The notes: generated from the letters alone by a model not told the origin. A DNA stretch of 64,000 nt from Haliotis rufescens (GCF_023055435.1 NW_025964124.1:186001-250000), one strand, 5' to 3'. Counted from the first letter of the stretch, positions 4,477 through 57,299 are shown. Translations and numbers: made by a program.

Positions 4477-6693
4477 TCATGTGGAGGCGTCGTCTCCTTT
4501 CCAGAACGGCCACTCCCACCACTTCTTCTTCTTTTGGCCGAACTGAAAGGATTAACAAAACAGTTCACACGTGGTTGCAGCCGTTCACCCATGTCACAAA
4601 ATAGTCTATGAAAAACAAGGAGCTCATTTCTATGTATTCTGTTTCTCTGAAACAAGAAAGGTAAATATAAGTTTAATGTGAATTTTTGGGGACATAGCAT
4701 TACATTGATGTATCAATCAATCCCACGGAAATATCAGTCCCGATTATCTGCCGACACAGACTCCACTGGGCGTGAAAGACAAACCAGTGGTTCAAGAAAT
4801 AGTACGTGTTTGTAGACTATTGCCGCACAGGATGGCGTCTGTAGGAAAGCGGCCCCAAGTGGGCAAAGTCGACATAATTACATATAAAGGACTGTGTACC
4901 TTCAGCACGGCGTCTATGATCTCATGAAGTGATCCTGTATTCAACACCAGTTGGTTCTCTATCCTGCTGGCCATATCGTCTCCGAGTAGAGGTGGAGCTG
5001 CCAAGAATTTCACTCATTATCACATCCTTTTTGCACATAAGACAAACTGACGACTGGGGCGTAAGTATTAAATCTTACACATTATGACGCTGTAAAAGAA
5101 TCAAATGCTATTGTGGTTGCTTACAGTATCTCATAATCGTTATTTGAACATCATTAAACGCGTCAGTACATCTTTCTTGAAACGTATGTGACATGTTTTT
5201 TTTTCACACAGATTTTCAAGAGTAAGATTTTCTAACTTACGATGCAGCTTAAAGATTCATTGAATGTTTCCATAACACTCATCATGTAGATACGAGAACA
5301 TCGGGTCGAATACGTTCACTTCGTTTCTCCTGACATTATTTCTGTGGTTACTTCTCTAATTAGAAAACTTCCGTATAAAACTTACATCTTCCCGGTTTCT
5401 CTGACATTCCTGCAGCCTGAAAAATATATAAAAGTTATCTTTGGAGTTGGTAAAACGTTTATTCAAATAAACACAGAGTAGCAGCATATTTTGTTTAACA
5501 AGACACTGAAAGGCATTCTGCGCGCCAACACACAACCATGCTTTCCATTCCCAAAGGTCAACTGACAACTGTATATGCAATGTTAAAATACATAAAACAC
5601 TAACCAGACACAAAGCTCATTTGAACAGATATTTTAATATTGCATATTATGGATTGTTTTGATTCAATGTCATGATTGGTTACGACATGGATCATTTGTC
5701 ATAATTCATTATTGTTTTATATCCATGGATATACATAGATTGCATTCTCCTAATCTTGACTGAACAAACAGGACGGTGCCTAGTGGTTAAAGCGTTCGCT
5801 CGTCACACCGGAGACGCGGATTCGATTCCCCAGATTAGTACTATGTGTGAAGCTCATGGCTTGTGTGATATTGCTGGACTATTGCTAAAACCGTCGTAAA
5901 ACCAAACTCACTAACTAACTAAACAAACAGCTTATTTGGCAGAAGATTGATTAAGAAGCAAGTGTTAAATCTGCAATATTTCAGAGGAAGAAATATTTAG
6001 GTTTGACATGCACATTCTAAAATATGTAGTTTATGAAAAGTGGTACCGAATCCTTTGTCACGGGTGTTACCTTTGGTGCCTGGTTCTGTTGACATTTCAG
6101 CACCTCATCAAGTATGTCCGGTAGTCTCCCTGGTGGCAACTTACACTTTTTCTCCACCACTTTTTGTAAATAAGTTGTCTTTATCTTCATTTCTTCCAGT
6201 ATAGTCCGTAGTTTGTCTGAAATATCCCAGAGAGATGTTTGATTCAGTGACGCATCTGTACTCTGGAACTGTACCTTCGGGGTTATTACTATTGAGAATA
6301 TTTACATTTATACAATGTGATCTGGAAATTTGATTACTGAGACCCAGGATTATTAGGGTTTCAAAGTTCTTGTTCATGTTACCGAGATTTTGGTCGCATC
6401 TAGGTCCAGAATGTGGAGGACAGCAAGAGTTACTTCCTGACTCCTAGAAAAGGGAAACAGGATCTGCACACATGCAAGATTATAATAATAGTAAGGAGTA
6501 TATGCTAAGATAACTCCAGACTAGGAAGCATGCTTGATAATATTCTGTCATTTTATAAGGAGTGAATATGATTGAATAACGCCTGTTTGACGAATGGCTG
6601 GAAGAATACTATACCCCATATGTTATCCATGGGGAAGACATGCTTTACATAGGAGCTAAAAACATGATCAAACTTTGTGTGACCCGATTGTCA

Positions 6694-6771
<78 letters not shown>

Positions 6772-7408
6772 CGTTTCTTCGAACACCAATCACACACTAA
6801 CCTGCATCTCTGCTCCCAGTGATGGCACATCTCTCCTTAAGGTGTTGGGTGTGTGATCATGAGAAACGACAGGTTCATCTCCACCATGATGTCTGGTTGT
6901 GACACCAGGGATGTTGTCACCTTGGTTCTTGGCGTCACTTCCACTAGAGTTGCCTTTGTCCTCTTGTCTCTTTACATCACTACACATTGAAATGCCTTTA
7001 TCATCTTGTGTGCATTGTTTGTTTGTCTTTTCCACATATGTCTGAAAATAAAGGTAGTTGTGGAATAGTGGTTATTGTGACTAATGTTTTGGTACATCTG
7101 TGAATACATGTGAACATTTACCTTGGCCTTCACGTCACGTCCTAGTTGTGACTGATCATCAAACAAACTGTTCTCGTATTAAAACTAATACACTCCTAGA
7201 TACATAATGCCTTTTAGAAAGTGGCAAAATGTAACAAATCTTATATTTTGGACTACACTCTCTCCATAGAGTACAAGTTCTCTTGCTATTTGGGAATCGA
7301 CCAGCAAAACACAGAATGTGTACTTTACTAAGAAAGTGTAATCCCCCAAATAAGATTTGTTACATTTGACCACTTTCTAAAATGCAGTATGTATCTATAA
7401 CTTTTCGC

Positions 7409-7439
<31 letters not shown>

Positions 7440-10400
7440 AATAATAATAAAAAAAAATAAAAAATAAAAAAAATAAAATAAAAAAATATATAAAAAAATA
7501 AATAAGTTAATAAAAAAATTGTTACATTACACTCCTGGTATGCATTTATAAAAAAAAATGATACTTAGTTGCACTATTAATTTAGTATTTTATCGGAAGT
7601 GTGTTCGATCAGGAACGTATCTCACTGACATGAACGGTACCTTTAGGAGAGCTTGTATGATCTTATTAAGTGATCCTTTATCCATCCCAAGTTGATTCTC
7701 TATCTTGCTGGCCATATCGTCTCCTAGAAGAGGTCGAGCTGTCGAGAATTTTTAATCATTATCACATCATTTTTGATAAAAAAAAGAATCTGTAAGGATC
7801 ACATTAGATGACGTAAAGAAAATGAATTTTATTTATGTTGCTCCGCACTTGCTCTAATAATTCATATATAGTCTTCATTTATGTTTTAATAATACCAATA
7901 CCGTTAAATAGAAAGGCGGATTTACAACAGTAAAGATTTTGTTCAATTACACACCAATCAAGAATATACACACGCTTTATCATAAGGAAACTAATACGTT
8001 ACGCTTGTAAAATTTCTGTCTGATTTGAAATATCCTTAGAAACGTACATTTGCCCTGTATCTCCGAAGTCACTGCAGACTGAAAAATATGAAAAATTACT
8101 GATTTCGTGTAACGCCTGTTTCAGTACATGCAGAGTAGCAGTATATTTTTTATGACAAGTAATCGAATCCCACTCCTCTCTTTTCATTCTCTCATTTATT
8201 CAGCTGTATGTAGGCCATCGGCCCATATTACTTTGTTACAGAAAATACAGCTCTTTGTCTGCAAGAGTGAAGATGACATTGGTGATAGACATTAATATTT
8301 TATGTATGTACATGTACAATATTTATCAGGAATATAAATTTTACGTAGGTTATCATAAGCAGTACATATCAATAGGAAATGGTATCCGTTTACTTTGTAT
8401 CTAAAGAAACACATTTCACATAGTCTGAGCCTTCTAGGTTTATTCATCAACGCCGAGTAAATATTTAGACGCTAAAGTGTGAACTTTGTGAATAGGAGAA
8501 CCGATATCACAATCAAGACCCCACACCTCGGCTATTTAAACAGGACTAGCATAACTTTAGAATCAAAGATTCTGAAAAAATATTGCACGGAATAGGTTGT
8601 AGTTTTGACAGATATTTAAGATAGCTAATGGGGTCTTTTTTGATTGTACAATAGCGTTGTGAACGTGTTTATGCCAGGACAAACATTGTGAGAATAATTC
8701 CAAAATCTTTATATGAGAATTGAAATTACCCCCGAGATACCATTTTGCACGTTTTCAAAGCATTCCACCATTTCTAAAAAATACAACTTTTGATTTGTCC
8801 AAATTTACAGAAAAATTGTATTCCACACTTCTGAAGCTCACATTAGTATAAGAAAAAAGTATCGTCAGAAAATAACTGGTGAAACAGTTGGCCCAGTCGT
8901 CTAAGGCGTCGCGATTCGCTGTGCAGAGTTGCGTCCCTTGGGCACGCCGGAAACCACAGCACCACAACTGTGCTCATGGGTTTCACCGAAGTTGTAAACA
9001 TCTGAGACCTGCATCACTTCTGGCTTTCCTCTACATTTAGCTGACACGCCGCGATATAACTGGAATACTGTTAAAAGCGGCGTTAAACCCAACTCACTCG
9101 CTCACTATCACTTCATCGGCTGTTTTTGGTGAGTCAAGAATAGCTGTAATGTTATTATCAGAAAACTGAGAACTGACACAACAAATATTATTACCCTTTC
9201 CTGGATGACCAGCTTCAATATACATGCCATGAAAATATTAATTTCATTCCTGCAATGATATATAGGAACTATAGACGAACCACCGAATATTTTAAAAACC
9301 TTCCAAAATGCCTTGCTATTATACCAGGTTTGTTTCAGCCTCCTAACAATCTTTTCCTGGTACGAGCATTTGGTCTCTCTCATTACGAAAGTATATATGT
9401 TTCAAGCTGTTAAGACAATCTCTACGATTCTCAAGTCTACACCTCCTATGAATATTTAATAGCCTCTCTCGCTCAGAACAATAATACTTACATTCTGCAT
9501 CATACCATGGTTGAGATTTAATCTTACTAAGTTGTAAGTTTCATACATTCTGCAGCTTCACAAATGGCTTCTGTAAATAGGTCAATTGCTACAATAGCAT
9601 TTGCTAACATAACACAATGATTAAGCACAGAGACAACATTTTATGACAATAGGTTGTTCAGCTTTGTCATCATCCCATACAAAACATGGCGCTGGTTTCC
9701 CTTTCCAGTTAATAATCGATAAGATCAACCAGTAACTGAACCCGTGATCAATGGTGTATGCCATCCAGATGACATAAAGCCAGCCGATTCACAGAGCATG
9801 ACCATCAAATCCACAATTTAAAATGGTCATGTCCATAGGATGCAGAATTAGGAGAAAAGAGTACTATATTTCAGAGGAGAAAACATGTATCTTTGACATA
9901 CACAAATTAACAGATACGGTTTAATGAAGAAATGTATTCTGTCCCAGAATTACTATTACCTCTTGTTCCTGGTCCAGGCTTTGCAGGACCTCATCAAGTA
10001 TTCTAAGTAGTTTCCCTGGTGGCAACTTGAACTTGGTCTCCACATTCCTTTGCAAAACTGCGGTCTCTTTATCAATACCTTCCTGTATACTCTGTAATGT
10101 GTCTGAAACAACCCAGTGGCGAGGTTTTATATAGTGATGCATCTATATTTAGAAAATGTACCCCCAGGATAATTACTACTGCACATTTAATTACATGCGA
10201 CGTGATATTACTTTATTAAACTGGAAATACGTTACTCTGGACGATTACCGCCAGTGTATACTGTAGGAAGGTATTGTTCCTGAAGACTTACTTATTTCTT
10301 CGAGATATGGGTTGCATCTACTTTCCGTGATCCCTTGGACGATTGCATTACTACCAGTAGAGCTGCTTTTGTCCACTTGGCTGTTAGCTTCACCACCAGA

Positions 10401-13181
10401 AGAGTAACCTTTGTCAAGTTTGCTGTTGGCATCACTTTCAGGAGGGTTGCCATTGTCCACCGGATAGTTGGCATCAGCTGTGTTGCATTCGTCATCTTGG
10501 CTGTTCGCAACACATCCAGTAGAGCTGTTATTGTCCTCTTGACTGATGGCGTTACTTCCAGTAGAGTTGCCATTGTCTTCTTTGCTGTTGGCTTTACTTG
10601 CAGTAGAGGTGCCATTGTCTTCTTGACTTATGGCTACACTTCCTGGAAAGGTGCCATTGTCTTCCTGGCTGCTGGCATGATTTCCAGTAGAGGTGTCATT
10701 GTCTCCTGTGCTGTTGGTAAGCCTTGCAGTAGAGGTGCCATTGCCTTCTTGGCTGTTGGCTTTACTTCCTGGAAAGGTGCCATAGTCCTCTTGACTGTTG
10801 GCTTTACTTCCTGGAAAGGTGCCATTGTCTTCCTGGCTGTTGGCATGCCTTGCAGTAAAGGTGCCATTGTCCCATTGGCTGTTGCCATGATTTCCAGTAG
10901 AGGTGCCATTGTCTTCTTGGCTGTTGGTATGACTTGCAGTAGGGATGCCATGGTCCTCTTGGCTGTTGGCATGACGTGCAGTAGAAGTGCTAATGTCTTC
11001 TTTGCTGTTGGTTTTACTTCCAGTAGAGATGCCATTGTCTTCTTTGCTGTTGGCATGACTTGCAGTAGAGGTGCTATTGTCTTCTTGGCTGTTGGCTTTA
11101 CTTCCAGGAAAGGTGCTATTTTCTTCCTGGCTTATCACTTTACTTCCAGGAAAGGTGCCATTGTCTTCCTGGATGCTGGCATGATTTCCAGTAGAGGTGC
11201 CATTGTCTTCTTGGCGTATGGCTTTACTTCTAGGAAAGGTGCCATTGTCTTCTTGGCTTATCACTTTACTTCCAGGAAAGGTGCCGTTGTCTTCTTGGCT
11301 GTTGGCATGACTTGCAGTAGAGGTGCCATTGTCTTCTTGGCTGTTGGCATGACTTGCAGTAGAGGTGTCATTGTCTTCTTTGCTGTTGGCTTTACTTCCT
11401 GGAAAGGTGCCATTGTCCTTTTGGCTGTTCGCATGCCTTGCAGTAGAGGTGCCATTGTCCTCTTGGCTGTTGGCATGACGTGCAGTAGAAGTGCTAATGT
11501 CTTCTTTGCTGTTGGTTTTACTTCCAGTAGAGATGCCATTGTCTTCTTTGCTGTTGGCATGACTTGCAGTAGAGGTGCCATTGTCTTCTTGGCTTACGGC
11601 TTTACTTCCAGGAAAGGTGCCATAGTCTTCCTGGCTGTTGGCATGCCGTGCAGTAGAAGTGCTAATGTCTTCTTTGCTGTTGGCATGACTTCCAGTAGAG
11701 GTGTCATTGTCCTCTTGGCTGTTGGCATGACTTGCAGTAGAGGTGCCATTGTCTTCTTGGCTGTTGACATGCCTTGAAGTAGAGGTGCCATAGTCTTCCT
11801 GGCTGTTGCCTTTACTTCCTGGAAAGGTGCCATTGTCTTCTTGGCTATTGGCATGACTTGCAGTAGAGGTGTCATTGTCTTCTTGGCTGTTGGTATGACT
11901 TGCAGTAGAGGTGCCATTGTCTTCTTGGCGTATGGCTTTACTTCCAGGAAAGGTGCCATTGTCTTCCTGTCTGTTGGCATGATTTCCAGTAGAGATGCCA
12001 TTGTCTTCTTGGCTGTTGGTATGACTTTCAGTAGAGGTGCCATTGTCTTCTTGGCTGTTGGTATTGTTGGCATGATTTCCCTGGAAGCGGTACGTTGTCG
12101 TTTCGAGTTCTGAACAAAATATATGCATCTTGTATTGAATCTTATCATTGAATGATAACATTCTACATTCATATACATCAATCAGTTGACATTGGGCGGC
12201 GAAACAGTGCTAGAACAATGTTTATGTTTACAGAACTGTATCAGTACATCTCTTACTGTCATTATCATGCAATTGAAACTGCACATGATTATCAAAGAAC
12301 TTTTACCTTGACCTCCACAGAGATGAACTGATCCCATGTATCTTCGTAGCTGTGGTTGATCATCAGACTTCTGCTGATATAGTGAACACGATAATCATAT
12401 TAAAAATAAACTCAATACCATGTGACGGTTAGTTTCAGTGGTATCTTTATTTAATCATAGTTGATTTGTGACTCCTATCTACCTTAAATCCATATTGTGT
12501 CCCAAGCACATCTCCAAGTCTTTTAAATGTGCACTTGTTGATTTGTGTATCGAGATGTCCTGATGTTATAAGAAGCTTGTCTATGTACTTGAAGCGTGGG
12601 GCACAATCTGGAGTAAAGCCACAGCCATATCGCTGTGACATAGCAAAGGCGGTGAAGAGAATAATGTTCCTACAGCTAAGATTACCTGAAATGAATACGG
12701 ATAAATACATTTACATGTTTTGTTCTTTGTATTAATTACGTTAAGATTGATATATTCATTTTTGAATAATCTACACAATTTACATACAATCAATCGTTGT
12801 AATACTTGAACTTAATCGTTTCTCGACATGGTTTGCTTCTGAAGAAATGGTATATGTAATAACGATTTGTAGTGTTATTTAGCTGTCCTTAATTTCACAT
12901 TCACTCGACTTGCCAAACTTCAGAACTTCAGAATAAACTGCACCCTATCTTAACAATTGTCACTTACAAAAGTTCTTACATTTATCCAGGAACCGTAGAA
13001 CCACTCCATTAAATTCAACATTCGGTCTGCCTTGAGGCCGGAATATCACAATGAGCGGCGGTGAAACAGTGGAGGACAGTTCCCTCTTCAGCTCAACATG
13101 GAGAGACAGTTGGTCTATAAAAGACTCCATGAGTTTGTCATCATAACGTGTGCTGGGCAGAACATAAATCGGCAGTGACAT
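4477..13181 (-). CDS. Multi-exon uncharacterised protein, paralogue A (~1084 aa): putative TIR-like alpha/beta domain + 41 x 14-aa repeats + duplicated helical modules + basic/aromatic C-terminus
   Basis: Manually assembled GT-AG exons with matching phases and no stops: 13181-12980, 12685-12483, 12373-12307, 12109-10292, 10102-9960, 8078-8048, 7738-7641, 7172-7122 (weak acceptor, frame-neutral), 7041-6802, 6443-6383, 6216-6071, 5416-5386, 4997-4900, 4542-4477; total 3255 nt. Exon sizes are conserved in paralogue B. Start codon and last exon choice are inferred. Confidence 0.8.
5771..5921 (+). mobile_element. Short tRNA-derived SINE (family 2), intronic
   Basis: GCCTAGTGGTTAAAGCGTTCGCTCGTCAC head, GATTCGATTCC B box, GATATTGCTGGA...CTCACT tail, AACAAAC flanking duplication. 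Confidence 0.85.
6696..6769. repeat. Compound (TA)n(TG)n microsatellite
   Basis: Directly visible. Confidence 0.98.
7408..7520. repeat. Poly-C tract followed by A-rich low complexity
   Basis: About 30 consecutive C followed by AAAAT-like runs. Confidence 0.95.
8560..9760 (-). mobile_element. Degenerate non-LTR retrotransposon fragments (similar type to 30741-33667)
   Basis: Peptide VNLDKSKVVFFRNGGML resembles VNLDKTKIVVFSKGNTL of the LINE at 30820-32109; WYNSKAFWK resembles SSSKQFWT; boundaries approximate. Confidence 0.65.
8889..9107 (+). mobile_element. SINE family 1, 5'-truncated and internally deleted
   Basis: TGGCCCAGTCGTCTAAGGCG...AAAAGCGGCGTTAAACCCAACTCACTC matches 32243-32527. Confidence 0.9.
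10344..12059 (-). repeat. Coding 42-bp minisatellite, 41 units (consensus NSQEDNGTSTASHA / NSQEDNGTFPGSKA)
   Basis: 572 aa = 40 x 14 + one 12-aa unit within the 638-aa ORF; diagnostic block repeated 504 bp (12 units) apart at 10981 and 11485. Confidence 0.95.
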
Positions 13182-13380
13182 ATCTGAAACAGATTTTAAC
13201 AGGCTTGACACATATATTTGCTACAATGTTAATATATTGATACATACATATAAAAATAAATAATTTTAAGTACATGAATGAGTACTTTCTATTCCGATTT
13301 TATTATGAGAAGAAAAATCATTGATAATTGTTCAACAAACTAATATTACATAAATCTAGTTGCGTCATGGTCTCACATAC

Positions 13381-18770: not shown

Positions 18771-19504
18771 TTTTCTTTTATTGTTAACCTGAAATATCAT
18801 TTTCATTGTATGTTTCTGAAGAACTTTACTGTTCTATCTCGCTTATCATAAGAGGTACCTTTTTCTTCAAGTGAAACAATTAACATTTTATTTGTGATGT
18901 ATATTTTTATCTTTGGCACGCTCATAAAGAATTGTCAGGGCTCGGAAATATATTAAAAATAGAAAAATCGATTTTCACCCAAAGTGGACTTTCAACATAT
19001 GTATTATGTACAAAAGTAAACAGGTAGTATCAAAATACTTTCAACTTAATAACATTGTAGCTAAAATTGTTTACTGTCAAAATGACACTTCATGTGATAT
19101 AAGAACAAACATCCGTCACAGTAATGTAAAGTTGATAACGTTTCAGATATTTGAAGAAATTGGAATTTAGCAAAATTGCAAATTGAACAATGCACTGTCT
19201 AATACATGTTTCGAACTAGAGTTAGATACAGGTCAAGAACAGCGCCTGAGCGTGCTTCATGACATGGATCATTGCTCATGCAACCGGTTACGTACCTGTA
19301 TTGCCAAGACAAGTTTATTTATATGTCATAATGATATATCAAGCCAACTGTGAAGTTGAACAAAAATCCATTACAACAGTTAGCACAGGCACAAGAAGCG
19401 GCAAGAAACGAGGCCAGGCGAGCGAAGGAGGAACAGGACCGTGCAGAAAGGGAAAGGAGAAATGCTGACGAAGCAAGGAAACAAGCATCTGAAAGTGCAT
19501 CAAG

Positions 19505-19893
19505 TTGCTGAAGAACGAGCACAAAAGGAAAGCCGTAGAGCGAAAGAGGAGAAAGAACTTGCAGAACAAGAAAGGAAGGCTGCTGCTAAAGCAAAGGAAG
19601 AAGCAGCTACAAGCACAATAAGAGCTGAACAAGCTGAAGAACAAGCCCAAAAGGAAAGCCGTAGAGCGAAAGAGGAGAAAGAACTTGCAGAACAAGAAAG
19701 GAAGGCTGCTGCTAAAGCAAAGGGAGAAGCAGCTACAAGCACAATAAGAGCTGAACAAGCTGAAGAACAAGCCCAAAAGGAAAGCCGTAGAGCGAAAGAG
19801 GAGAAAGAACTTGCAGAACAAGAAAGGAAGGCTGCTGCTAAAGCAAAGGGAGAAGCAGCCACAAGCACAAGAAGAGCTGAACAAGCTGAAGAA
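19505..19893 (+). repeat. Coding 126-bp tandem repeat x3 (42 aa = 6 heptads, E/K/A/R-rich)
   Basis: AQKESRRAKEEKELAEQERKAAAKAK(E/G)EAATSTIRAEQAEEQ; GCCCAAAAGG at 19645 and 19771; diverged units on either side. Confidence 0.95.
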
Positions 19894-20770: not shown

Positions 20771-23700
20771 TTGTTGTTAATGCTGGTGGCTTTGGAAGGT
20801 AGAGGTATTCGGGAGACAAGGGAATGAAAGATATCATTAATATCTACTGACTTTTTGGTAGAAAACTGGCCTTGGTTTCGATCATTTCACAATACCTCTT
20901 GGTTCTACATTTTCAGCAATTTGCATGGGGTCCAAAGAAGACAGAACGAGGAAGATGGACATCACAGGTATCAACAGATAATAATGAGTGTTAGAAACAT
21001 GATAAATAAAATCTATAATAATCTAACTCTTGCACATAATTGAACTCTCCCTGTAACTAATATACATTACGTCATATTTTTCTTTCATCAAACACTCTGC
21101 AGGCGGTTGAACATCTTCGCAACCAATTTCTTGAACACATGTATGACAAGGAAGGGAAGCTGATACGTGGGAAGATCTTGATATTTGGTCCTACCGGTGC
21201 TGGAAAGTCCTCCTTCTGTAATGGCCTGAGATCAGCACTGAAGGATTCTGCCAACTACTATGCCGTTGGTAATCTTGTCGAGTCACTTACTAGCAACGTA
21301 AGTATTTAACCGGGAACAAATCTGGAATAAGCTGAAACTTCATTTCACAAAAACCGGTTGTTAATATCTCAGAAACATATGCATACTAAGAAACCTCCTC
21401 TGTCGTCATCTATTGTTTTTCAGGTGACTTATTTTCACACACCGGTCTCTGAAGTTTTTAAAGTAAGGATCCCCAATGTTCATGATATATATTTTAACAC
21501 ACGTCATACTTACCTTCACATTCGCTGTAGATCTGGAAGCTGCTGAATTAGTTCACTAGAAACATTGCATCACTGGAAAGTCATTACCCCATTCTTTAAA
21601 ATAATAACCTATAATACACCCATAAACGTTTTCTTCAAACATTTCCTGATCCTTGAACTGGAACTCATGCACCACCTTCGTTAATATGTCTTAGCCTACT
21701 ACCAATTCCTACATGTCAGTGCCAAAACTTATTCTTTGTGATAAAAATGCTTCTGATTTGTCGGTTGACTACAAAGATTCAATAAAACTAATGTTTGTGT
21801 TGTACATTTCTTAAAAAAAATTGTTGCACGTTCATTTTTATCAGGAGAAATTTGTGTTGCATGTACATAATTGACTAGGTGCCAATGTCATTCATTGAAA
21901 TCCCAGTCATCACCTTATGTTTCCCCGTTAACCCAAACCAGTTTATTTTACAGTTCCACTCTACACAATATGGTGACCACTGGATTATTGACATGCCAGG
22001 AATATTTGAATCTAATGATTCAAAAAACGGAGAATATTGAAGCTATTGTATCCGGCAGGGTTCGCTTTGATGCCCAGGTAAGCACTGCACAGTACTATCA
22101 TCTTAAAGTTTTAGATATGGACAAAATAGAAATTGAAATATACATTTGTTAAATCATCATTCATGACCTACTGATTCATTTTTTTGTTTCAAGATTATAA
22201 AACGTCTTGATGTGACAGGCAACCTGCAAGAGGCACGAAGGGACGTGTCATGTGTTGTGCTGGTTCTCCACCATGGCATCACTGTGGGTGATGAATTGAA
22301 ACGTCAGATAGATGCTGTCATACGATTGGGGGGAGATGGCGGTAAGTTAAAACATTGGCACACCCTCAGGTCCTGAAACTAGTAAAACTGCCATGTGTAT
22401 TTTTGTGCCATTTTGAAACTGTGTGAATTAATTGAACTTAACAAAACTTTCAAGGTATTTTTCTCAGTGACTGCTGCTGCTGCTCCTGCTGCAATATTGC
22501 CAAACCGCAGGATTTGAATACTTCCAAAATACAACTGAAGAAAGCTCATGGCATATGAATAGGTCATTTAGAGTCTCAGCATCTTGAGTTGATGGTATAA
22601 TTTCCATATCATAAGCAGGCCTCCATGAATCACCATTAAATTGTGAAGAGACCAGGTGTTCTCGAAAAGGTGAGCGTGCCTTGGCCTACCAGTGGCACCC
22701 ATCAGAACACATGCAATGGCGAGTCGCAGCTCTGTAGTGTCTTCATGTTTGGGAATACACACTCTTGGATGAATATCTCTATCATACAGTGTGGTGGAAA
22801 GTGTTTTGTTAAGCGGATTCTTTATGCATAAATCGGAATATGAGACAAGCGAGGCGGTCTCTCTGATCTCCTTTATTTCCACTTCAGGTTATTTAATGTT
22901 ATGAGATGATAGATAACAATCTCCAACTGTATACAAAGAAGAAGAATGTAATACCTGATATACATAACAGTTCCCAAAAATATGAATATAGAGGACAATA
23001 TTCAGGATAATCACTTCTGAAATGACTTGTTTCTTTCATAAAACAGAATCCATGTATAGAAATGAGGCTATATATCAGGCCAAGGTCACTCCTTTCGAAA
23101 TGTGTAACCATAAACGATAATTGGGATATGCTTTAGGATGTGTGTTTTACGATCGCTATACAATAGTGACTTCAGTTATTTCGCCTGTACTGATTTAATG
23201 TATCTTGTTTCAGCTCTGTCCTACCACCTGGTGCTGACTCACCTGGATGAGTGTGACCCACAGTTCAAGGACCCAGATAACATCCCCAACCTGTACAATT
23301 CTCCTCTAGTACAGGAATCTGTGAAGAGCGTGTCAGAAGATACTGGCATTCCACCATACGCCATCAGTTACGTGAAGAAGTATGTGACAGAAACAGAAAC
23401 AGACACCAACACTAAGGTGCTTCACCTGAGAGCTCTTGACAGAATCCTCACCTCTGCAGCTGACCAAGTGGAGAAGATGATTGATTTAAAACTGCAGAAG
23501 AAGATGTATGAGGATGCCCCTGCTACTGAGGAGACACAGGCTGTATCTGAAGATAATGCTGAGCCGCTACAAGATGAATCAGTCAGCTGGGCCATCCCAG
23601 TGTTGATATCATCTGGGATATTTAGAATTGCATCAGTCTGAGGCATCATTTGAATAAAATTATTAAGGAGTGCAGAAACATGCGATGTCTCATGTCTATA

Positions 23701-51080: not shown

Positions 51081-54000
51081 TCATTTCCATAACGGCCACT
51101 CCCACAACTTCTTCTTCTTTTGGCCGAACTGAAAGGATTAACAAAACAGTTCACACGTGGTTGCAGCCGTTCACCCATGTCACAAAATAGTCTATGAAAA
51201 ACAAGGAGCTCATTTCTATGTATTCTGTTTCTCTGAAACAAGAAAGGTAAATATAAGTTTAATGTGAATTTTTGGGGACATAGCATTACATTGATGTATC
51301 AATCAATCCCACGGAAATATCAGTCCCGATTATCTGCCGACACAGACTCCACTGGGCGTGAAAGACAAACCAGTGGTTCAAGAAATAGTACGTGTTTGTA
51401 GACTATTGCCGCACAGGATGGCGTCTGTAGGAAAGCGGCCCCAAGTGGGCAAAGTCGACATAATTACATATAAAGGACTGTGTACCTTCAGCACGGCGTC
51501 TATGATCTGATGAAGTGATCCTGTTTTCAGCACCAGTTGGTTCTCTATCCTGCTGGCCATATCGTCTCCGAGTAGATGTGGGGCTGTCAAGAATTTCACG
51601 CATTATCACATCCTTTTTGCACATAAGACACACTGACTACTAGGGCGTAAGTATTAAATCATACACATTATGACGATGTAAAAGAATCAAATGTTATTGT
51701 GGTTGCTTACAGTATCTCATAATCGTTATTTGAACATCACTAAACGCGTCAGTACATCTTTCTTGAAACGTATGTGACATGTTTTTGTCACACTGATTTT
51801 CAAGAGTAAGATTTTCTAACTTACGATGCAGCTTAAAGATTCATTGAATGTTTCCATAACACTCATCATGTAGATACGAAAACATCGGGTCGAATACGTT
51901 CACTTCGTTTCTCCCGACATTATTTCTGTGGTTACTTCTCTAATTAGAAAACTTCCGTATAAAACTTACATCTTCCCCGTGTCTCTGACATTCCTGCAGC
52001 CTGAAAAATATATAAAAGTTATCTTGGGAGTTGGTAAAACGTTTATTCAAATAAACACAGAGTAGCAGCATATTTTGTATAACAAGACACTGAAAGGCAT
52101 TCTGCGCGCCAACACACAACCATGCTTCCATTCCCAAAGGTCAACTGACAACTGTATATGCAATGGTAACATACATAAAACACTAACCAGACACAAAGCT
52201 CATTTGAACAGATGCAGATATTTTGATATTGCATATTATGGATTGTTTTGATTCAATGTCATAATTGGTTACGGCATGCATCATTTGTCATAATTCATTA
52301 TTGTTCAACGGCTATACATAGATTGCATTCTCCTAATCTTGACTGAACAAACGGGACGGTGCCTAGTGGTTAAAGCGTTCGCTCGTCACACCGGAGACGC
52401 GGATTCGATTCCCAGATAAGTACTTTGTGTGAAGCTCATGGCTTGTGTGATATTGCTGGACTATTGCTAAAACCGGCGTAAAACCAAACTCACTCACTAA
52501 CTAAACAAACAGCTTACTTGGCAGAAGATTAATTAAGAAGCAAGTGTTAAATCTGCAATATTGAGGTTTGACATGCACATTCTAAAATATGTAGTTGATG
52601 AAAAGCAGAACTACATCCTTTGTCACAGGTGTTACCTTTGGTGCCTGGTTCTGTTGACATTTCAGCACCTCATCAAGTATGTCCGGTAGTATCCCTGGTG
52701 GCAACTTACACTTTTTCTCCACCGCTTTTTGTAAATCAGTTGTCTTTATCTTCATTTCTTCCAGTATAGTCCGTAGTTTGTCTGAAATATCCCAGAGAGA
52801 TGTTTGATTCAGTGACGCATCTGTATTCTGGAACTGTACCTTCAGGGTAATTACTATTACTTGAGAATATTTGCATTTATACAATGTCATCTGGAAATAT
52901 GATAACAGAGACCTAGGTTTACTAGGGTTTCAAAGTTCTTGCTCATGTTACCGAGATTTTGGTCGCATCCAGGTCCAGAATGTGGAGGACAGCAAGAGTT
53001 ACTTCCTGACTCCTGGAAAAGGGAAACAGGAACTGCATACATGCAAGATTATAATAATAGTAAGGAGTATGTATTACATGTTATATGCTAAGATAACTCC
53101 AGACTAGGAAATAGCGCCTGTTTGACGAATGGCTGGAGGAATACAATACCGCATATGTTATCCACGGGGAAGACATGCTTTACATAGGAGCTGAAAACAT
53201 GATCAAACTTTGTGTGACCCGAGCGTCAGCAGATATAAATAAATAAATAAATATATATTTATATATATATGTAGTTGTAACGTTTCTTCCAGCAGCAATC
53301 ACACACGAACCTGCATCTCTGCTCCCAGTGGTGGCACATCTCTCCTTGAGGTGTTGGGTGTGTGATCATGAGAAACGACAGGTTCATCTCCACCATGAAG
53401 TCTGACTGTGACACCAGCGATGTTGTCACCTTGACTCTTGGCACCACTTCCAGTAGAGTTGCCTTTGTCCACTTCGTTGTTGGCATGACTAACAGTAGAG
53501 TTCATTTTGTCCACTTGATTGGCGGCGTGACCAACGGTAGAGTCTTCTTTGTCCTCTAGGCTGTTGGCATGACTACCAGTAGCGTCCTCTTTGTCCTCTA
53601 GGCTGTTGGCACGACTACCAGTAGAGTCCTCTTTGTCTTCTAGGCTGTTGGCATGACTACCAGTAGAGTCCTCTTTGTCTTCTAGGCTGTTGCCACGAAT
53701 ACCAGTAGAGTCCTCTTTGTCCTCTAGGCTGTTCGCACGACTACCAGTAGATTCCTCACTGTCTTCTAGGCTGTTGCCACGACTACCAGTAGAGTCCTCT
53801 TTGTCCTCTAGGCTGTTGGCATGATTACCAGTAGAGTCCTCTTTGTCCTCTAGGCTGTTGGCACGACTACCAGTAGAGTCCTCTTTGTCTTCTAGGCTGT
53901 TGGCACGACTAACAGTAGAGTCCTCTATGTCTTCTAGGCTGTTGGCATGACTACCAGTAGCGTCCTCTTTGTCCTCTAGGCTGTTGGCACGACTACCAGT

Positions 54001-57000
54001 AGAGTCCTCTTTGTCCTCTAGGCTGTTGGCACGACTTCCAGTAGAGTCCTCTTTGTCCTCTAGGCTGTTGGCATGACTACCAGTAGCGTCCTCTTTATCC
54101 TCTAGGCTGTTGGCATGACTACCAGTAGCGTCCTCTTTGTCCTCTAGGCTGTTGGCACGACTACCAGTAGAGTCCTCTTTGTCCTCTAGGCTGTTGGCAT
54201 GATTACCAGTAGAGTCCTCTTTGTCCTCTAGGCTGTTGGCACGACTACCAGTAGAGTCCTTTTTGTCTTCTAGGCTGTTGGCATGACTACCAGTAGAGTC
54301 CTCTTTGTCCTCTAGGCTGTTGGCACGACTACCCATAGAGTCCTCTTTGTCCTCTAGGCTGTTGACACGACTACCAGTAGAGTCCTCTTTGTCTTCTAGG
54401 CTGTTGGCATGACTACCAGTAGCGTCCTCTTTGTCCTCTAGGCTGTTGGCACGACTACCAGTAGAGTCCTCTTCGTCCTCTAGGCTGTTGGCATGACTAC
54501 CAGTAGAGTCCTCTTTGTCCTCTAGGCTGTTGGCACGACTACCAGTAGAGTCCTTTTTGTCTTCTAGGCTGTTGGCATGACTACCAGTAGAGTCCTCTTT
54601 GTCCTCTAGGCTGTTGGCACGACTACCCATAGAGTCCTCTTTGTCCTCTAGGCTGTTGACACGACTACCAGTAGAGTCCTCTTTGTCTTCTAGGCTGTTG
54701 GCATGACTACCAGTAGCGTCCTCTTTGTCCTCTAGGCTGTTGGCACGACTACCAGTAGAGTCCTCTTTGTTTTCTAGGCTGTTGGCACGACTACCAGTAG
54801 AGTCCTCTTTGTATTCTAGGCTGTTGGCACGACTACCAGTAGAGTCCTCTTTGTTTTCTAGCCTGTTGGCACGACTACCAGTAGAGTCCTCTTTGTATTC
54901 TAGGCTGTTGGCACGACTACCAGTAGAGTCCTCTTTGTTTTCTAGGCTGTTGGCACGACTACCAGTAGAGTTCTCTTTGTATTCTAGGCTGTTGGCATGA
55001 CTAACGGTTGAGTTCCCTTGGTCTACTTGGCTGTTGGCATGATTTCCAGTAGAGTTGCTATTGTCTTCTTCGCTGTTGGTATGACTTGCAGTAAGGGTGC
55101 CATTGTCCTCTTGCCTGTTGTTATGACTTGCAGTAGAAGTGTTAATGTCTTCTTTGCTGTTGGTATGATTTCCCTGGAAGCGGTACGTTGTCGTTTCGAG
55201 TTCTGAACAAAATATATGCATCTTGTATTAAATCTTAAGATTTGAATGATAACATTCGACATTCATTACATCAATCAGTTGACATTGGGCGGCGAAACAG
55301 TGCTAGAACAATGTTTATTTTTACAGTACTGTATCAGTACATCTCTTACTGTCATTATCATGCAATTGAAACTGCACATGATTATTAAAGAACTTTTACC
55401 TTGACCTCCACAGAGATGAACTGATCCCACGTATCTTTGTAGTTGTGGTTGATCATCAGACTTCTGCTGATATAGTGAACACGATAATCATATTAAAAAT
55501 AAGCTCACTACACAGTGACGGTTAGTTTCAGTGGTATCTTTATTTAATCGTAGTTGACTTGTGACTCATATCTACCTTAAATCCATATTCTGTCCCAAGC
55601 ACATCTCCAAGTCTTTTAAATGTGCACTTGTTTACTTGTGTATCAAGATGTCCTGATGTTATAAGAAGCTTGTCTATGTACTTAAAGCGTGAGGCACAAT
55701 CTGGAGTAAAGCCACAGCCATATCGCTGTGACATGGCAAAGGCGGTGAAGAGAATAATGTTCCTACAGCTAAGATTACCTGAAATGAAAACGGATAAATA
55801 CATTTATCATATAATGGGTAGGTTTCTCGGCAGGATAAATCCAACGGATAAAAACGATATCCGTTGGGGTCATATGCGGATAGAGATGCAAATATCAAAG
55901 GTCAAGTAGGACTACTTTCACTGTTTATAAACAAACATGGCGTCGCCCTCGTCATTCGGCGATCGAGTCAGATTTAACCATCGGGAATCTGGATAAACTA
56001 CAGGGATAATTGCTATCATTATCAAAAGAACAGTCTAATATACTGAAAAGCAGTGTCTAACTGTGACGTAGCTAAGGCAATTTATAAGTTTTGGCAACTT
56101 TGGAGATATAAATTTCGACACAATTTTGCGAGGGGGGATGAGGCCTAGCCAAGCGGGATCAGTAGCCATATCTGTGACCTGTATCTGTAGCCATATCTTT
56201 AGACCTCTGCGGCTTGAAACCTTCTCCACAAATTAAAATAGTTGGATTTGGCCGAAATAAGTCTGAATTGTTATCTTGTTTCGTTTTGTCGCTGTGTGTA
56301 CATCTGACTACACTTCTTAACGTTATAACAGGACAGACCGACTGTCAACAACGTCTGGCCGTGACGTCTCATAGACTAGGGTAAGAGTAGCTTCCCGTTG
56401 ACAAAGGGCAGTTACTATAGCGGACAGACCGATGGAATGCCGCGAAAGGCAATTAAAAACAACTGTTGTTTTGCGTATATGTTGCTTCGCCACTGTATAA
56501 GAAACAGATTTCAGTTGGAACTATATCGGCTACTGTCACTGTCCGACTGACACATCACCTACCCTGTGACGCAATAAATATTAATGCACGCATTCCAGGA
56601 AAAGTCGCAATGTTTCGGTAATGTTTGTGAGAGAGGGAAAGCGATTTAAAGCACAGAATTAAAGAATGACATTATATGATAAAGAAGTTATCACGCTTGG
56701 GGATGGGAAATATCCTGTATTAGGAATAAACACTATGTATTTAGCTCGCCAAGGCTCGCTAAATACAATGTTTAATCCTAATGCAGGATATTTACCATCC
56801 CCAAACACACTCGCGTGATAACCTCTATTTACATGTTTTGTTCTTTGTATTAATTACGTTAAGATTGATATATTATTTTTTTAATAATCTACACAATTTA
56901 CATACAATCAATCATTGTAATGCTTGGACTTAATCCTTTCTCGACATGGTTTGCTTCTGAAGAAATGATCTATGTAATAACGATTGGTATTGTTATTTAG

Positions 57001-57299
57001 CTTTCCTTAACTTCACATTCACTAGACTTGCCAAACTTCAGAACTTCAGAATAAACTGCACCGCATCTTAACAATTGTCGCCTACAAAAATTCTTACATT
57101 TATCCAGGAACCGTAGAACCACTCCATTAAATTCATCATTCGGTCTGCCTTGAGGCCGGAATATCACAATGTGCAGCGGTGCAAGAGTCGGGGACAGTTC
57201 CTTGTCCAGCTCAACATGGAGAGACAGTTGGTCTATAAAAGACTCCATGAGTTTGTCATCATAACGTGTGCTGGGCAGAACATAAATCGGCAGTGACAT
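51081..57299 (-). CDS. Multi-exon uncharacterised protein, paralogue B (~915 aa): putative TIR-like domain + 41 x 14-aa acidic repeats + one helical module + basic/aromatic C-terminus
   Basis: Exons 57299-57098, 55778-55576, 55466-55400, 55202-53311, 53012-52952, 52781-52636, 52000-51970, 51583-51486, 51128-51081; all GT-AG, phases consistent, 2748 nt, no internal stops; ends FGQKKKKLWEWPLWK*. Confidence 0.82.
52353..52503 (+). mobile_element. SINE family 2 (duplicate of 5771-5921)
   Basis: Same sequence and position in the intron. Confidence 0.85.
53440..55161 (-). repeat. Coding 42-bp minisatellite, 41 units (consensus NSLEDKEDSTGS[R/H]A)
   Basis: 574 aa = 41 x 14 within the 640-aa ORF; 294-bp (7-unit) higher-order repeat marked by the SMG variant at 54331 and 54625. 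Confidence 0.96.
55802..56831 (+). mobile_element. Complete ~1-kb non-autonomous element with ATTTA direct repeats, internal complementary region and long 3' hairpin (DIRS/Crypton-like, inferred)
   Basis: Absent from the equivalent intron (single ATTTA at 12709-12713); ATTTA at 55802-55806 and 56827-56831; TTTATCATATAATG (55803) inverse to CATTATATGATAAA (56670); ~65-bp-arm hairpin 56684-56826. Confidence 0.85.

What the first reader, a model, noticed from the sequence alone, without database searches (positions are those of the whole stretch)
4477..13181. Hidden multi-exon gene family: putative TIR-like domain on a long repeat stalk
Seen: 14 (copy A) and 9 (copy B, 51081-57299) exons splice into uninterrupted frames with identical exon sizes, although the ORF track shows only fragments. 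The N-terminal ~135 aa alternate beta/alpha (PIYVL / DKLMESFIDQL / LIVIF-RPQGRPN[V/D]EF / NIILFTAF / YIDKLLI / NKCTFKRLGDVL). Knowledge: this matches the flavodoxin-like topology of TIR and nucleoside deoxyribosyltransferase domains, in which an acidic residue on the helix after the third strand is catalytic. Inference: a cytosolic immune signalling or NAD/nucleotide-processing protein with an architecture I do not recognise as a named gene.
Basis: partly seen in the sequence, partly recalled or inferred. Interest (0 to 1): 0.78.

Follow-up and report, generated by a model that had tools for sequence, protein, structure and literature searches.

The report
Abalone orphan-domain repeat protein family
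This is a real, expressed, abalone-only gene family whose small N-terminal domain has a common alpha/beta fold but is not demonstrably a TIR domain, and each copy sits head-to-head with an interferon-type GTPase gene, which points to a role in innate immunity.

Summary
The spliced genes are real. Copy A (minus strand, 4477-13181) reads as 13 GT-AG coding exons, 1067 aa. Copy B (51081-57299) has 9 exons, 915 aa, with identical sizes for shared exons. RNA contigs reproduce the junctions E1|E2, E4|E5, E5|E6 and E6|E7, but they come from a close paralogue or allele.

The family has at least 13 loci on one 4-Mb contig. NCBI already models some as "uncharacterized" or "serine-aspartate repeat-containing" proteins of Haliotis rufescens and H. 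cracherodii. No relative outside Haliotis was found.

The 135-aa N-domain folds as four beta-alpha units, a flavodoxin-like sandwich. TIR membership fails:
- no Pfam hit;
- no profile similarity to this genome's own TIRs;
- structural matches (Z 7-8) tie with pseudo-GTPases, GTPases and receiver domains;
- the proposed catalytic Glu follows strand 2, not strand 3.

Behind the N-domain come about 38 in-register 14-aa acidic repeats (gene-specific consensus), helical modules and a basic Trp-rich tail.

All 13 copies lie divergently beside an IFI44-like GTPase gene, in 11 amplified cassettes. My best reading is a partner or adaptor of that GTPase. This scan noted a similar cassette on other DNA (s1-815124).

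The parts
12980..13181 (-). Copy A coding exon 1 (ATG at 13181; the exon itself starts at 13183 after a conserved acceptor). First half of the N-domain: strand 1, helix 1, strand 2, RPQGRPNxEF loop, helix 2.
   Evidence: Frames and splice sites. RNA contig pieces 12976-13182. Acceptor conserved in 13 of 13 loci.
12483..12685 (-). Copy A exon 2. Second half of the N-domain: strand 3, YGxGF loop, strand 4, TSGHLDTQ loop, helix 4.
   Evidence: Joint 12685|12980 in runs X1, X3 and X6. Alignment A2.
12307..12373 (-). Copy A exon 3, a 67-nt linker exon.
   Evidence: Frame. A 67-nt unplaced gap between the E2 and E4 pieces of a 620-nt RNA contig.
10292..12109 (-). Copy A exon 4, 1818 nt. About 38 in-register 14-aa repeats (consensus about NSQEDNGTSTASHA), net charge -52 over 605 aa.
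   Evidence: TRF period 42 x 37.5 copies. Register and composition. RNA contig ends at 12109 and 10292.
9960..10102 (-). Copy A exon 5, first helical module part 1 (KFKLPPGKLLRILDEVL).
   Evidence: Joints 10102|10292 and 8078|9960.
8048..8078 (-). Copy A exon 6, a 31-nt micro-exon.
   Evidence: Joints 8078|9960 and 7738|8048 in X1 and X3.
7641..7738 (-). Copy A exon 7, first helical module part 2 (PLLGDDMASKIENQLGMDKGSLNKIIQALLK).
   Evidence: RNA contig piece 7641-7738.
6802..7041 (-). Copy A exon 8, degenerate acidic repeat-like spacer.
   Evidence: Frame and GT-AG sites. tblastn of paralogue models. No RNA check.
6383..6443 (-). Copy A exon 9 (61 nt).
   Evidence: Frame and homology. No RNA check.
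6071..6216 (-). Copy A exon 10, second helical module part 1.
   Evidence: Frame and homology. No RNA check.
5386..5416 (-). Copy A exon 11, second 31-nt micro-exon.
   Evidence: Found as the counterpart of exon 6 with the same acceptor context. No RNA check.
4900..4997 (-). Copy A exon 12, second helical module part 2.
   Evidence: Frame and homology. No RNA check.
4477..4542 (-). Copy A last coding exon: basic, Trp-rich tail and stop.
Evidence: Similar K/R+W tails in P0001-P0004.
57098..57299 (-). Copy B exon 1.
55576..55778 (-). Copy B exon 2.
55400..55466 (-). Copy B exon 3.
53311..55202 (-). Copy B repeat exon, about 37 x 14 aa with a different consensus (NSLEDKEDSTGSRA). It runs into the counterpart of A's exon 8 tail.
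52952..53012 (-). Copy B exon 5 (counterpart of A exon 9).
52636..52781 (-). Copy B exon 6 (counterpart of A exon 10).
51970..52000 (-). Copy B exon 7, 31-nt micro-exon.
51486..51583 (-). Copy B exon 8 (counterpart of A exon 12).
51081..51128 (-). Copy B last coding exon and stop.
21061..23638 (+). GTPase-domain exons of the divergent neighbour, an IFI44-like gene. Open stretches 21061-21306 (P-loop GPTGAGKSS), 21879-22037 (IIDMPG), 22167-22373 and 23138-23638 (LTHLDE plus hydrophobic C-tail).
   Evidence: NCBI name 'interferon-induced protein 44-like [Haliotis rufescens]' for P0010, 97% identical to the last exon. Pfam MMR_HSR1 23.6 bits against a cut-off of 21.9.

Best explanation
This is a Haliotis-restricted, transcribed gene family encoding soluble proteins built from four parts.
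1. A conserved 135-aa N-terminal domain with a four-unit beta-alpha (flavodoxin-like) fold that belongs to no detectable sequence family.
2. A long, acidic, disordered run of in-register 14-aa repeats. It is homogenised within each gene and differs between genes.
3. One or two roughly 90-aa helical modules.
4. A short basic, tryptophan-rich tail.

Each gene is fixed head-to-head with an IFI44-like GTPase gene, and the pair has been amplified as a cassette about 11 times within 2.8 Mb.

Inferred, not shown: the protein acts as a partner or adaptor of the paired IFI44-like GTPase in innate (probably antiviral) defence, with the two genes probably co-regulated from the shared intergenic region. 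In this reading the N-domain binds a partner or a small, possibly phosphate-bearing, ligand through the conserved loops that follow its strands. The repeat run serves as a fast-evolving spacer. I do not read the N-domain as a TIR-type NAD-cleaving enzyme.
For: Gene and splicing.

Family size and restriction.
- 13 exon-1 copies, all on contig C346.
- A profile search of 1.84 billion representatives gave 7 hits. Five are family proteins, all later named as Haliotis, and two are repeat junk.
- The helical modules also occur only in Haliotis family members, 3 hits among 2042 candidates.

Constraint: dN/dS median 0.33 over the 44 of 45 pairs with dS > 0.05.

Fold.
- Two AF2 models give the same four-strand topology.
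- ESM Atlas structure rows are flavodoxin-like folds, TM 0.5-0.7.
- Foldseek best rows are NrdI, E 0.027-0.028.

Solubility: no hydrophobic span.

Repeats. pLDDT is about 30 over the repeats.

Pairing: each of the 13 exon-1 copies has a close IFI44-like last exon (at least 72% identical to the window's) 9-29 kb away on the opposite strand in divergent orientation. This makes 11 cassettes, one of which carries three tandem family copies.

Neighbour identity.
Against: - No experiment or expression series links the two genes.
- Co-regulation was not tested. My scan for ISRE, STAT and NF-kB-like motifs upstream gave nothing consistent and had no control.
- Physical interaction was not modelled, because no complex tool was available and exons were not joined.
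- The RNA contigs come from a paralogue or allele, so copies A and B themselves may be weakly expressed.
- A and B exons are no more conserved than their introns (93.5-98.4% against 92.7-100%). dN/dS in the A/B/L002 trio is 0.43-0.85. The youngest copies therefore show little constraint.
- Three close IFI44-like copies have no family partner in the partial flanks I could fetch.
- Adjacency by cassette duplication proves shared history, not shared function.
Confidence: 0.45

Rival explanations
1. One reading: the N-domain is a divergent TIR or nucleoside-deoxyribosyltransferase-type domain that cleaves NAD or processes nucleotides, with the Glu of RPN[V/D]EF as catalytic residue.
For: - TIR structures are among the tied top VIA rows: RPS4 TIR Z 7.7 and 7.1, TIR-STING 6.7 and 7.0, SIGIRR TIR 6.3.
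- MyD88 TIR and DNPH1 appear in Foldseek at E 0.15-0.25.
- By eye the strand and loop pattern resembles TIR boxes 1 and 2.
- E56 is invariant in 10 of 10 paralogues.
Against: - No Pfam TIR, TIR_2 or NDT hit at E <= 10 in 5 of 5 proteins.
- hhalign against abalone TIRs is no better than shuffles, 82 of 100 shuffles scoring as high.
- Only 3 (perhaps 4) of 39 N-domain rows are TIR, against 18 P-loop or GTPase-type and 10 receiver domains.
- Four strands are predicted, not five.
- E56 follows strand 2.
- There is no invariant acidic residue on the segment after strand 3.
Confidence: 0.12
2. The N-domain is a pseudo-GTPase, that is, a P-loop-less, truncated small-G-like domain in the manner of CENP-M or IRGQ. 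It pairs with or regulates the IFI44-like GTPase by heterodimerising through a G-domain-like interface.
For: - CENP-M is the top VIA row for both models (Z 8.2, rmsd 4.0, 123 aligned; Z 8.0, rmsd 3.8, 123 aligned).
- LRRK2 ROC, HflX, GIMAP4/7, IRGQ, Era, EngB, Arl13B and a p190RhoGAP pseudoGTPase domain also appear.
- Ran, Rab and Ras follow NrdI in Foldseek.
- The gene is always paired with a GTPase gene.
Against: - hhalign of the N-domain against the paired GTPase domain (P0010 + P0011) scores 13.9, and 30 of 100 shuffles score as high.
- Per-exon hhalign gives probabilities of at most 1.8%.
- There is no G1 motif.
- The domain has four strands against six in G domains.
- All Z values are within the range that the tool says a common arrangement gives.
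- The follow-up on s1-815124 could not show its partner to be a GIMAP.
Confidence: 0.18
3. The family has nothing to do with immunity. It would be an acidic repeat protein used for something else, for example a scaffold or a mineral- or cation-binding protein, and its adjacency to IFI44-like genes would be a passive result of segmental duplication.
For: - NCBI names some members after bacterial Ser-Asp repeat adhesins.
- The repeats are acidic and S/T/N/G-rich.
- The cassettes clearly spread by duplication, with TE-rich flanks duplicated too.
Against: - No signal peptide or membrane span, so a secreted matrix role is unlikely.
- The divergent arrangement is kept in 11 cassettes whose N-domains have diverged to dS 0.3-0.6, whereas repeats and module numbers changed freely.
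- The NCBIfam Sdr matches are noise (8.3 bits against cut-offs of 1700-2500).
Confidence: 0.15

Closest known systems
TIR domains (Pfam PF01582 / PF13676), including NADase TIRs
   Same: Similar size. Flavodoxin-like alternation of strands and helices, with hydrophobic strands followed by conserved loops. Structural Z 6.3-7.7. Use in cytosolic immune proteins.
   Different: No sequence or profile similarity. Four predicted strands rather than five. No conserved Glu on the helix after strand 3. The structural score does not stand out from GTPases or receiver domains.
Pseudo-GTPases such as CENP-M and IRGQ, and TRAFAC GTPase domains (LRRK2 ROC, GIMAP, HflX)
   Same: Best structural rows for both models (Z 8.2 and 8.0 for CENP-M). 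No P-loop, as in pseudo-GTPases. Genomic pairing with a GTPase.
   Different: No sequence similarity to the paired IFI44-like GTPase. Smaller, with four strands. The assignment rests on scores the tool itself calls middling.
Flavodoxin / NrdI and CheY-like receiver domains
   Same: Best Foldseek rows are NrdI (E 0.027-0.028). Ten receiver domains appear among the 39 N-domain rows. Acidic residues follow strand 1 and a T-S-G motif follows strand 4 (seen by eye).
   Different: No Pfam hit. No phospho-acceptor Asp at the end of strand 3. The fifth beta-alpha unit is lacking. These are bacterial families with no known animal counterparts of this kind (from my own knowledge).
IFI44-like GTPase plus abalone-only partner cassette noted earlier in this scan (s1-815124, other DNA of the same genome)
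   Same: Head-to-head pair of an IFI44-like GTPase gene and a lineage-restricted partner gene, amplified as a cassette.
   Different: That partner is described as small and membrane-anchored. This one is 900-1070 aa, soluble and repeat-rich.
Bacterial Ser-Asp repeat (Sdr) adhesins, the source of NCBI's automatic name
   Same: Long acidic Ser/Asp-rich low-complexity repeats.
   Different: Compositional resemblance only (8.3 bits against cut-offs of 1700-2500). Different repeat unit, no adhesin domains and no secretion signal.

Membership tests
TIR (PF01582, PF13676) | Significant match to the family profile | tested here: not met
   Pfam found no TIR-type family for 5 of 5 full-length paralogues at E <= 10, and none per exon. 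hhalign against a profile of 8 abalone TIRs scored 10.0, with 82 of 100 shuffles as high. The same Pfam model finds 111 matches in this genome, and none of those listed is on contig C346.
TIR (PF01582, PF13676) | Five-stranded parallel sheet (betaA-betaE) with five surrounding helices | tested here: inconclusive
   AF2 gives four strands and four main helices in both models. pLDDT is only 43-85 and the loop after strand 3 falls below 50, so a missed element cannot be excluded.
TIR (PF01582, PF13676) | Structural similarity that stands above other folds | tested here: not met
   TIR Z 7.7 and 7.1 against CENP-M 8.2 and 8.0, HflX 7.3 and 7.6, LRRK2 7.5 and 7.2. No Foldseek hit at E <= 0.001.
NADase-type TIR | Conserved catalytic Glu on the helix after the third strand (feature recalled from my own knowledge) | tested here: not met
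   The invariant E56 lies after strand 2. Between strands 3 and 4 no acidic residue is invariant: the Asp of TPDC is Ala or Thr in L005 and L006.
Nucleoside 2-deoxyribosyltransferase (PF05014) | Profile match or outstanding structural match | tested here: not met
   No Pfam hit. DNPH1 appears only at Foldseek E 0.15-0.25.
Small GTPase / TRAFAC G domain | G1 P-loop GxxxxGK[ST] and the G3/G4 motifs | tested here: not met
   The sequence after strand 1 is LPSTRYDDKL. No MMR_HSR1, AIG1 or Ras hit, whereas the neighbour P0010 passes MMR_HSR1.
Pseudo-GTPase derived from the paired IFI44-like GTPase | Residual sequence similarity to that GTPase domain | tested here: not met
   hhalign score 13.9, with 30 of 100 shuffles as high. 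Per-exon comparisons gave probability <= 1.8%.
CheY-like receiver domain | Profile match; phospho-acceptor Asp at the end of strand 3; Lys after strand 5 | tested here: not met
   No Response_reg hit. Strand 3 ends in F-T-A. There is no fifth strand.
IFI44-like GTPase (the neighbour gene, not the finding itself) | GTPase domain with P-loop, and naming by homology | tested here: met
   P0010 is 97% identical over 82% of the last exon and is named interferon-induced protein 44-like by NCBI. MMR_HSR1 scores 23.6 bits against a cut-off of 21.9. The motifs GPTGAGKSS, IIDMPG and LTHLDE are conserved in paralogues.

The most novel reading that the evidence does not exclude
The orphan flavodoxin-like domain would be a new kind of sensor or effector domain that works with IFI44-like GTPases as a two-gene antiviral module. 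Abalone would have amplified and diversified this module about 11-fold. The gene-specific repeat stalk and the variable number of helical modules would be the parts that diversify under host-pathogen conflict. This would give a first handle on what invertebrate IFI44-like GTPases actually do.
Probability: 0.22. Interest if true: 0.72.

Novelty: new variant of a known kind. Interest (0 to 1): 0.5.

Why it matters
IFI44 and IFI44-like genes came up in my literature search in studies of oyster antiviral responses (search listing only). Their mechanism, to my knowledge, is unknown in any animal. A lineage-specific partner gene that has stayed locked head-to-head with an IFI44-like GTPase through about 11 rounds of cassette duplication is a concrete, testable candidate for a functional partner.

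The family also shows three other things. First, a conserved orphan domain can be combined with a repeat run that evolves in concert within each gene. Second, exon-level tools plus RNA contigs can recover a gene with two 31-nt micro-exons. Third, on the negative side, a by-eye TIR call from beta/alpha alternation does not survive profile and fold tests.

Tried and rejected
1. TIR or NDT membership was rejected on Pfam, hhalign against abalone TIRs and non-discriminating fold searches.

2. I tested my own idea that the N-domain is a decayed copy of the neighbouring IFI44-like GTPase. By eye, RPQG resembles DMPG and TSGHLD resembles LTHLD. Per-exon hhalign and hhalign against whole-domain database proteins were no better than shuffles, so I dropped it as a sequence claim. 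It survives only as a fold-level rival.

3. I first thought the helical modules were death-fold-like. AF2 shows long helices and a four-helix unit. Only weak sub-threshold Pfam HTH_68 matches appeared (19-20 bits against a cut-off of 27). The VIA rows were filled by the N-domain, so the module fold remains untested.

4. ESM Atlas by features gave only scores below 0.9 for unnamed clusters.

5. PDB sequence search gave 0 hits. PADLOC and NCBIfam gave nothing for the family.

6. P0006 matched the exon-1 profile at E 1e-15, but only by summing six roughly 12-bit repeats. By my reading it is a translated tRNA-derived SINE array. I take this for chance and did not follow it at DNA level.

7. I looked for a family-like partner beside more distant IFI44-like genes on other contigs and beside three unpaired copies. 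hmmsearch of six-frame fragments found nothing below E 0.9, but only partial flanks could be fetched.

8. The promoter motif scan had no consistent pattern and no control, so it is not used.

9. Literature. Searches for 'abalone' + 'interferon-induced protein 44' (15 papers) and 'Haliotis' + 'serine-aspartate repeat-containing protein' (1 unrelated paper) gave no report of this family. I saw listings and abstract starts only and read no paper. Supplementary files were not consulted.

10. I could not establish whether copies A and B themselves have NCBI models. Copy A (1067 aa) lay outside the length band (by the tool's 0.55-1.75 rule, about 284-905 aa for the 517-aa query).

Full report
WHAT IS THERE

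The window is animal DNA. Names returned by the protein database identify it as Haliotis rufescens, the red abalone, in line with earlier notes of this scan.

The finding lies on the minus strand. Stop-to-stop reading frames and the sequence itself let me build a model of copy A with 13 coding exons, listed in the parts. Every intron is GT-AG. No exon has an internal stop and no split codon is a stop. The frame runs from the ATG at 13181 to a stop ending at 4477, 3204 nt or 1067 aa.

Copy B (57299 to 51081) has 9 coding exons and 915 aa. Exon sizes are identical to A wherever the exons correspond (202, 203, 67, 61, 146, 31, 98 nt). Its large exon runs directly into the counterpart of A's exon 8 tail, so it lacks A's exons 5-7.

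A conserved acceptor 2 nt before the ATG (13 of 13 loci), and RNA contigs carrying 38-150 further 5' letters that do not lie next to exon 1, imply at least one 5'UTR exon. That may be the difference.

RNA EVIDENCE

The run index offered no run on record as RNA that holds the stretch. Seven 'RNA?' runs hold small shares of it.
- Joints with CT..AC ends (GT..AG on the gene strand) fall exactly on the model: 12685|12980 in X1, X3 and X6, and 10102|10292, 8078|9960 and 7738|8048 in X1 and X3.
- One 620-nt contig runs exon 1, exon 2, a 67-nt unplaced gap equal to the length of exon 3, and then exon 4 from 12109.
- In X1, seven of the eight fully intronic 200-bp bins have zero depth. The exception is 8000-8199, which holds exon 6.
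- The splice pattern itself argues that these runs are RNA.
- The contigs differ from copy A by 4-7%. In exon 2 they carry the letters of the upstream paralogue L002 at 12 of the 14 listed differing positions, yet they differ from both copies in exon 1. They therefore show that the family is transcribed and spliced as modelled, not that copy A itself is.
- Exons 8-13 were outside the laid stretch. They rest on frames, splice sites and tblastn of NCBI paralogue models.

THE FAMILY

- Exon 1 finds 13 intact copies in the genome, all on the 4.05-Mb contig C346. Exon 2 follows in 12 of the 13 loci within the 1.5-kb flanks.
- An HMM of exon 1 searched against 1.84 billion representative proteins gave 7 hits. 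Five are full-length family proteins. Two are repeat artefacts scoring through 6-7 summed weak stretches.
- A word-indexed search with the N-domain of P0004 gave 7 proteins, all H. rufescens or H. cracherodii. NCBI names them 'uncharacterized protein LOC...' or 'serine-aspartate repeat-containing protein I-like/F-like'.
- The C-terminal half of P0004 finds only three of the same proteins.
- The family is therefore already modelled by NCBI for several paralogues, is uncharacterised, and has no detectable relative outside Haliotis in these collections. Length windows and the shortness of the exon profile limit that statement.
- Two literature searches found no report of it (listings only).

ARCHITECTURE

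1. The N-domain is 135 aa, encoded by exon 1, one split codon and exon 2. Paralogues are 67-99% identical to copy A. Nei-Gojobori dN/dS has a median of 0.33 over the 44 of 45 pairs with dS > 0.05, rising to 0.43-0.85 in the young A/B/L002 trio.
2. A 22-aa linker exon follows.
3. Next comes one exon of about 38 perfectly in-register 14-aa repeats. TRF gives period 42, 37.5 copies, 79% matches. The exon is S/N/T/G/D/E-rich with net charge -52 over 605 aa. The repeat consensus is gene-specific: about NSQEDNGTSTASHA in A, NSLEDKEDSTGSRA in B and SQVDKGKSAGSDAD in P0003. The N-domains of A and B are 88-96% identical, so the repeats are homogenised within genes and diverge quickly between them. AF2 gives pLDDT of about 30 there.
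4. There are one or two helical modules. Each is split into a 143-146-nt exon, a 31-nt micro-exon and a 98-nt exon. In P0004 the second module is modelled as four helices at pLDDT 74-88.
5. A short basic, Trp-rich tail ends the protein.
6. No exon has a hydrophobic span (maximum 19-residue hydropathy 0.81), so there is no signal peptide and no membrane segment.

THE N-DOMAIN FOLD

Because exons may not be joined, I folded two database paralogues, using alignments that included single-exon rows from the window and loci.
- P0002: strands at 4-8, 42-46, 74-79 and 104-107, helices at 14-25, 52-65, 92-95 and 114-131, 10-residue block mean pLDDT 43-85.
- P0004: the same order.
- The ESM Atlas's own model of P0002 finds unnamed chordate clusters (TM 0.69-0.70 by query) and NrdI, receiver, CobQ and patatin-type folds (TM 0.48-0.64).
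- Foldseek against the PDB gives no hit at E <= 0.001 for either model. The best rows are NrdI flavodoxins (E 0.027-0.028), followed by Ran/Rab/Ras, TIR-STING, DNPH1 and MyD88 TIR.
- VIA-align against 48,161 chains gives CENP-M Z 8.2 and 8.0, RPS4 TIR 7.7 and 7.1, LRRK2 ROC 7.5 and 7.2, HflX 7.3 and 7.6, TIR-STING 6.7 and 7.0, receiver domains about 6.4 and flavodoxins about 6.2.
- By my reading of the entry titles, the 39 rows that cover the N-domain divide as 18 P-loop or GTPase-type, 10 receiver domains, 3 TIR (a fourth, Cat1, is uncertain), 2 flavodoxin-like and 5 other.
- The tool itself warns that a Z of 7-8 is what models without a clear relative typically reach.

The conclusion is a generic flavodoxin-like three-layer alpha/beta/alpha domain, with no superfamily singled out.

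TESTS OF THE TIR READING

- Pfam finds nothing for the N-domain at E <= 10 in 5 of 5 proteins, and nothing per exon.
- The PDB sequence search gives 0 hits. PADLOC and NCBIfam give nothing.
- The Pfam TIR model finds 111 matches at E <= 1e-10 in this genome, and none of those listed is on C346.
- I aligned 8 of these TIR domains and compared the profile with the N-domain profile. The hhalign score was 10.0 and 82 of 100 column shuffles did as well.
In both models it opens the helix after strand 2, whereas the catalytic Glu of NADase TIRs follows the third strand (from my own knowledge).
- After strand 3 no acidic residue is invariant.

The topology part of the interpretation therefore holds, and the family assignment and the catalytic proposal do not.

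GENOMIC CONTEXT

On the opposite strand, starting a few hundred bases upstream of exon 1, lies a gene whose last four open stretches (21061-23638) encode a GTPase domain. A database protein 97% identical to its last exon is named 'interferon-induced protein 44-like [Haliotis rufescens]' and passes Pfam MMR_HSR1 (23.6 bits against a cut-off of 21.9).

Searching the genome with that last exon gave 27 matches, of which 14 are close (at least 72% identical) and all on C346. Setting these beside the 13 family copies gives the following:
- Every family copy has a close IFI44-like last exon on the opposite strand in divergent orientation.
- For 11 copies the distance is 8.8-24.7 kb.
- The other two belong to a tandem triple of the family gene that shares one GTPase gene (22-29 kb).
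- That makes 11 cassettes spread over 2.8 Mb.
- Three close GTPase copies have no family partner in the partial flanks I could fetch.

The N-domains of different cassettes have diverged to dS 0.3-0.6 while the arrangement was kept. An earlier finding of this scan (s1-815124, other DNA of this genome) describes an IFI44-like GTPase head-to-head with a different, small membrane-anchored abalone-only partner, also amplified. I could not test whether the two partners are related (one search was blank).

AN IDEA OF MY OWN THAT FAILED

CENP-M, GIMAPs and LRRK2 top the fold lists, and by eye RPQG and TSGHLD recall the neighbour's DMPG and LTHLD. I therefore tested whether the N-domain is a decayed copy of the neighbouring GTPase.
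- hhalign against each GTPase exon profile gave probabilities of at most 1.8%.
- hhalign against the contiguous GTPase proteins P0010 and P0011 gave a score of 13.9, and 30 of 100 shuffles did as well.

There is no sequence support, so it remains only a fold-level rival.

HOW IT MOST LIKELY WORKS

Shown:
- a transcribed, constrained, Haliotis-only family of soluble proteins;
- an orphan flavodoxin-like head;
- a gene-specific acidic repeat run predicted to be disordered;
- helical modules and a basic Trp tail;
- strict divergent pairing with an IFI44-like GTPase gene.

Inferred:
- The pair is a functional unit, probably co-regulated from the shared intergenic region.
- The protein is a partner or adaptor of the GTPase in innate defence.
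- The head binds a partner or small ligand through the conserved loops after its strands. Those loops are the usual binding edge of this fold (from my own knowledge).
- The repeat run is a fast-changing spacer.
- The tail may hold the protein at a membrane or on an acidic surface. The neighbour ends in a hydrophobic tail.

I put this at about 0.45. The pseudo-GTPase version is at 0.18, a non-immune repeat protein at 0.15, and the TIR/NDT enzyme at 0.12.

NOVELTY AND SCORE

The genes are not unknown to databases, since NCBI has models for paralogues, but the family is uncharacterised and its head domain is unassigned. What remains is an orphan domain plus a concertedly evolving stalk, locked to IFI44-like GTPases in an amplified cassette. 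That is a moderately interesting and testable lead into invertebrate IFI44 biology. It is a second variant of a cassette this scan has already seen. Interest is 0.5.

LIMITS

- I searched, folded and compared nothing that joins the window's exons.
- Only one 6000-letter read-laying run was available.
- The AF2 alignments are shallow (20-21 rows, the most distant only 44-52% identical to the modelled protein).
- The fold of the helical module was not searched on its own.
- Supplementary files of papers were not consulted, and no paper was read beyond the listings.

Noticed in passing
window 8889-9106 (intron 5 of copy A): A short element with summed contig depth of roughly 1e5-5e5 in all four runs. 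Its loose ends read like the T-arm of a tRNA (GGTTCGAATCCCGG). It is probably a very abundant, transcribed tRNA-derived SINE.
   Followed up: no
window 2863-3447 and 44805-45389 (minus strand): Two nearly identical 194-aa ORFs with a DDE_3 transposase domain (Pfam E 1.6e-13), 41.9 kb apart. Together with copies A and B (44.1 kb apart) and a further copy 36.7 kb upstream of the window, they show a tandem segmental duplication of the whole unit, transposons included.
   Followed up: partly
window 19384-20025 (plus strand, inside the IFI44-like neighbour): An open 214-aa Lys/Glu/Ala-rich stretch with three near-identical repeats of about 37 aa (…QAEEQAQKESRRAKEEKELAEQERKAAAKAK…). It is likely a coiled-coil exon of the GTPase gene. 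The opposite strand is also open for 260 aa.
   Followed up: no
window 10335-11777 (plus strand) and the other two minus-strand frames of 10248-12209: The 42-nt repeat array is open in several frames on both strands (480-aa ORF on the plus strand; 195-, 165- and 111-aa stretches in the other minus frames). This is a by-product of a stop-free repeat unit and is not evidence of overlapping genes.
   Followed up: no
protein P0006, compared with exon 1 at window 12980-13181: A database 'protein' made of six copies of what reads as a translated tRNA-derived SINE matches positions 14-54 of the exon-1 profile. By eye it is about 34% identical per unit, roughly 12 bits each, E 1e-15 only by summing. 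I take it for chance, but an origin of part of exon 1 from such an element was not tested at DNA level.
   Followed up: no
   Followed up: no
window 8048-8078, 5386-5416 and 51970-52000: Three 31-nt micro-exons with the same TTTTTCAG acceptor context. One of them is confirmed by RNA contigs.
   Followed up: partly
window 30820-32109 (minus) and 62256-63617 (plus): Two ORFs with reverse-transcriptase domains (Pfam RVT_1, E 5.9e-10 and 8.1e-40). They are retroelements between and beside the cassettes.
   Followed up: no
G000:C346:2560646-2574804 (L007-L009): Three family copies about 7 kb apart with identical exon-1 peptides and near-identical exon-2 peptides. This is a very recent tandem triplication of the family gene alone, sharing one IFI44-like neighbour.
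   Followed up: partly
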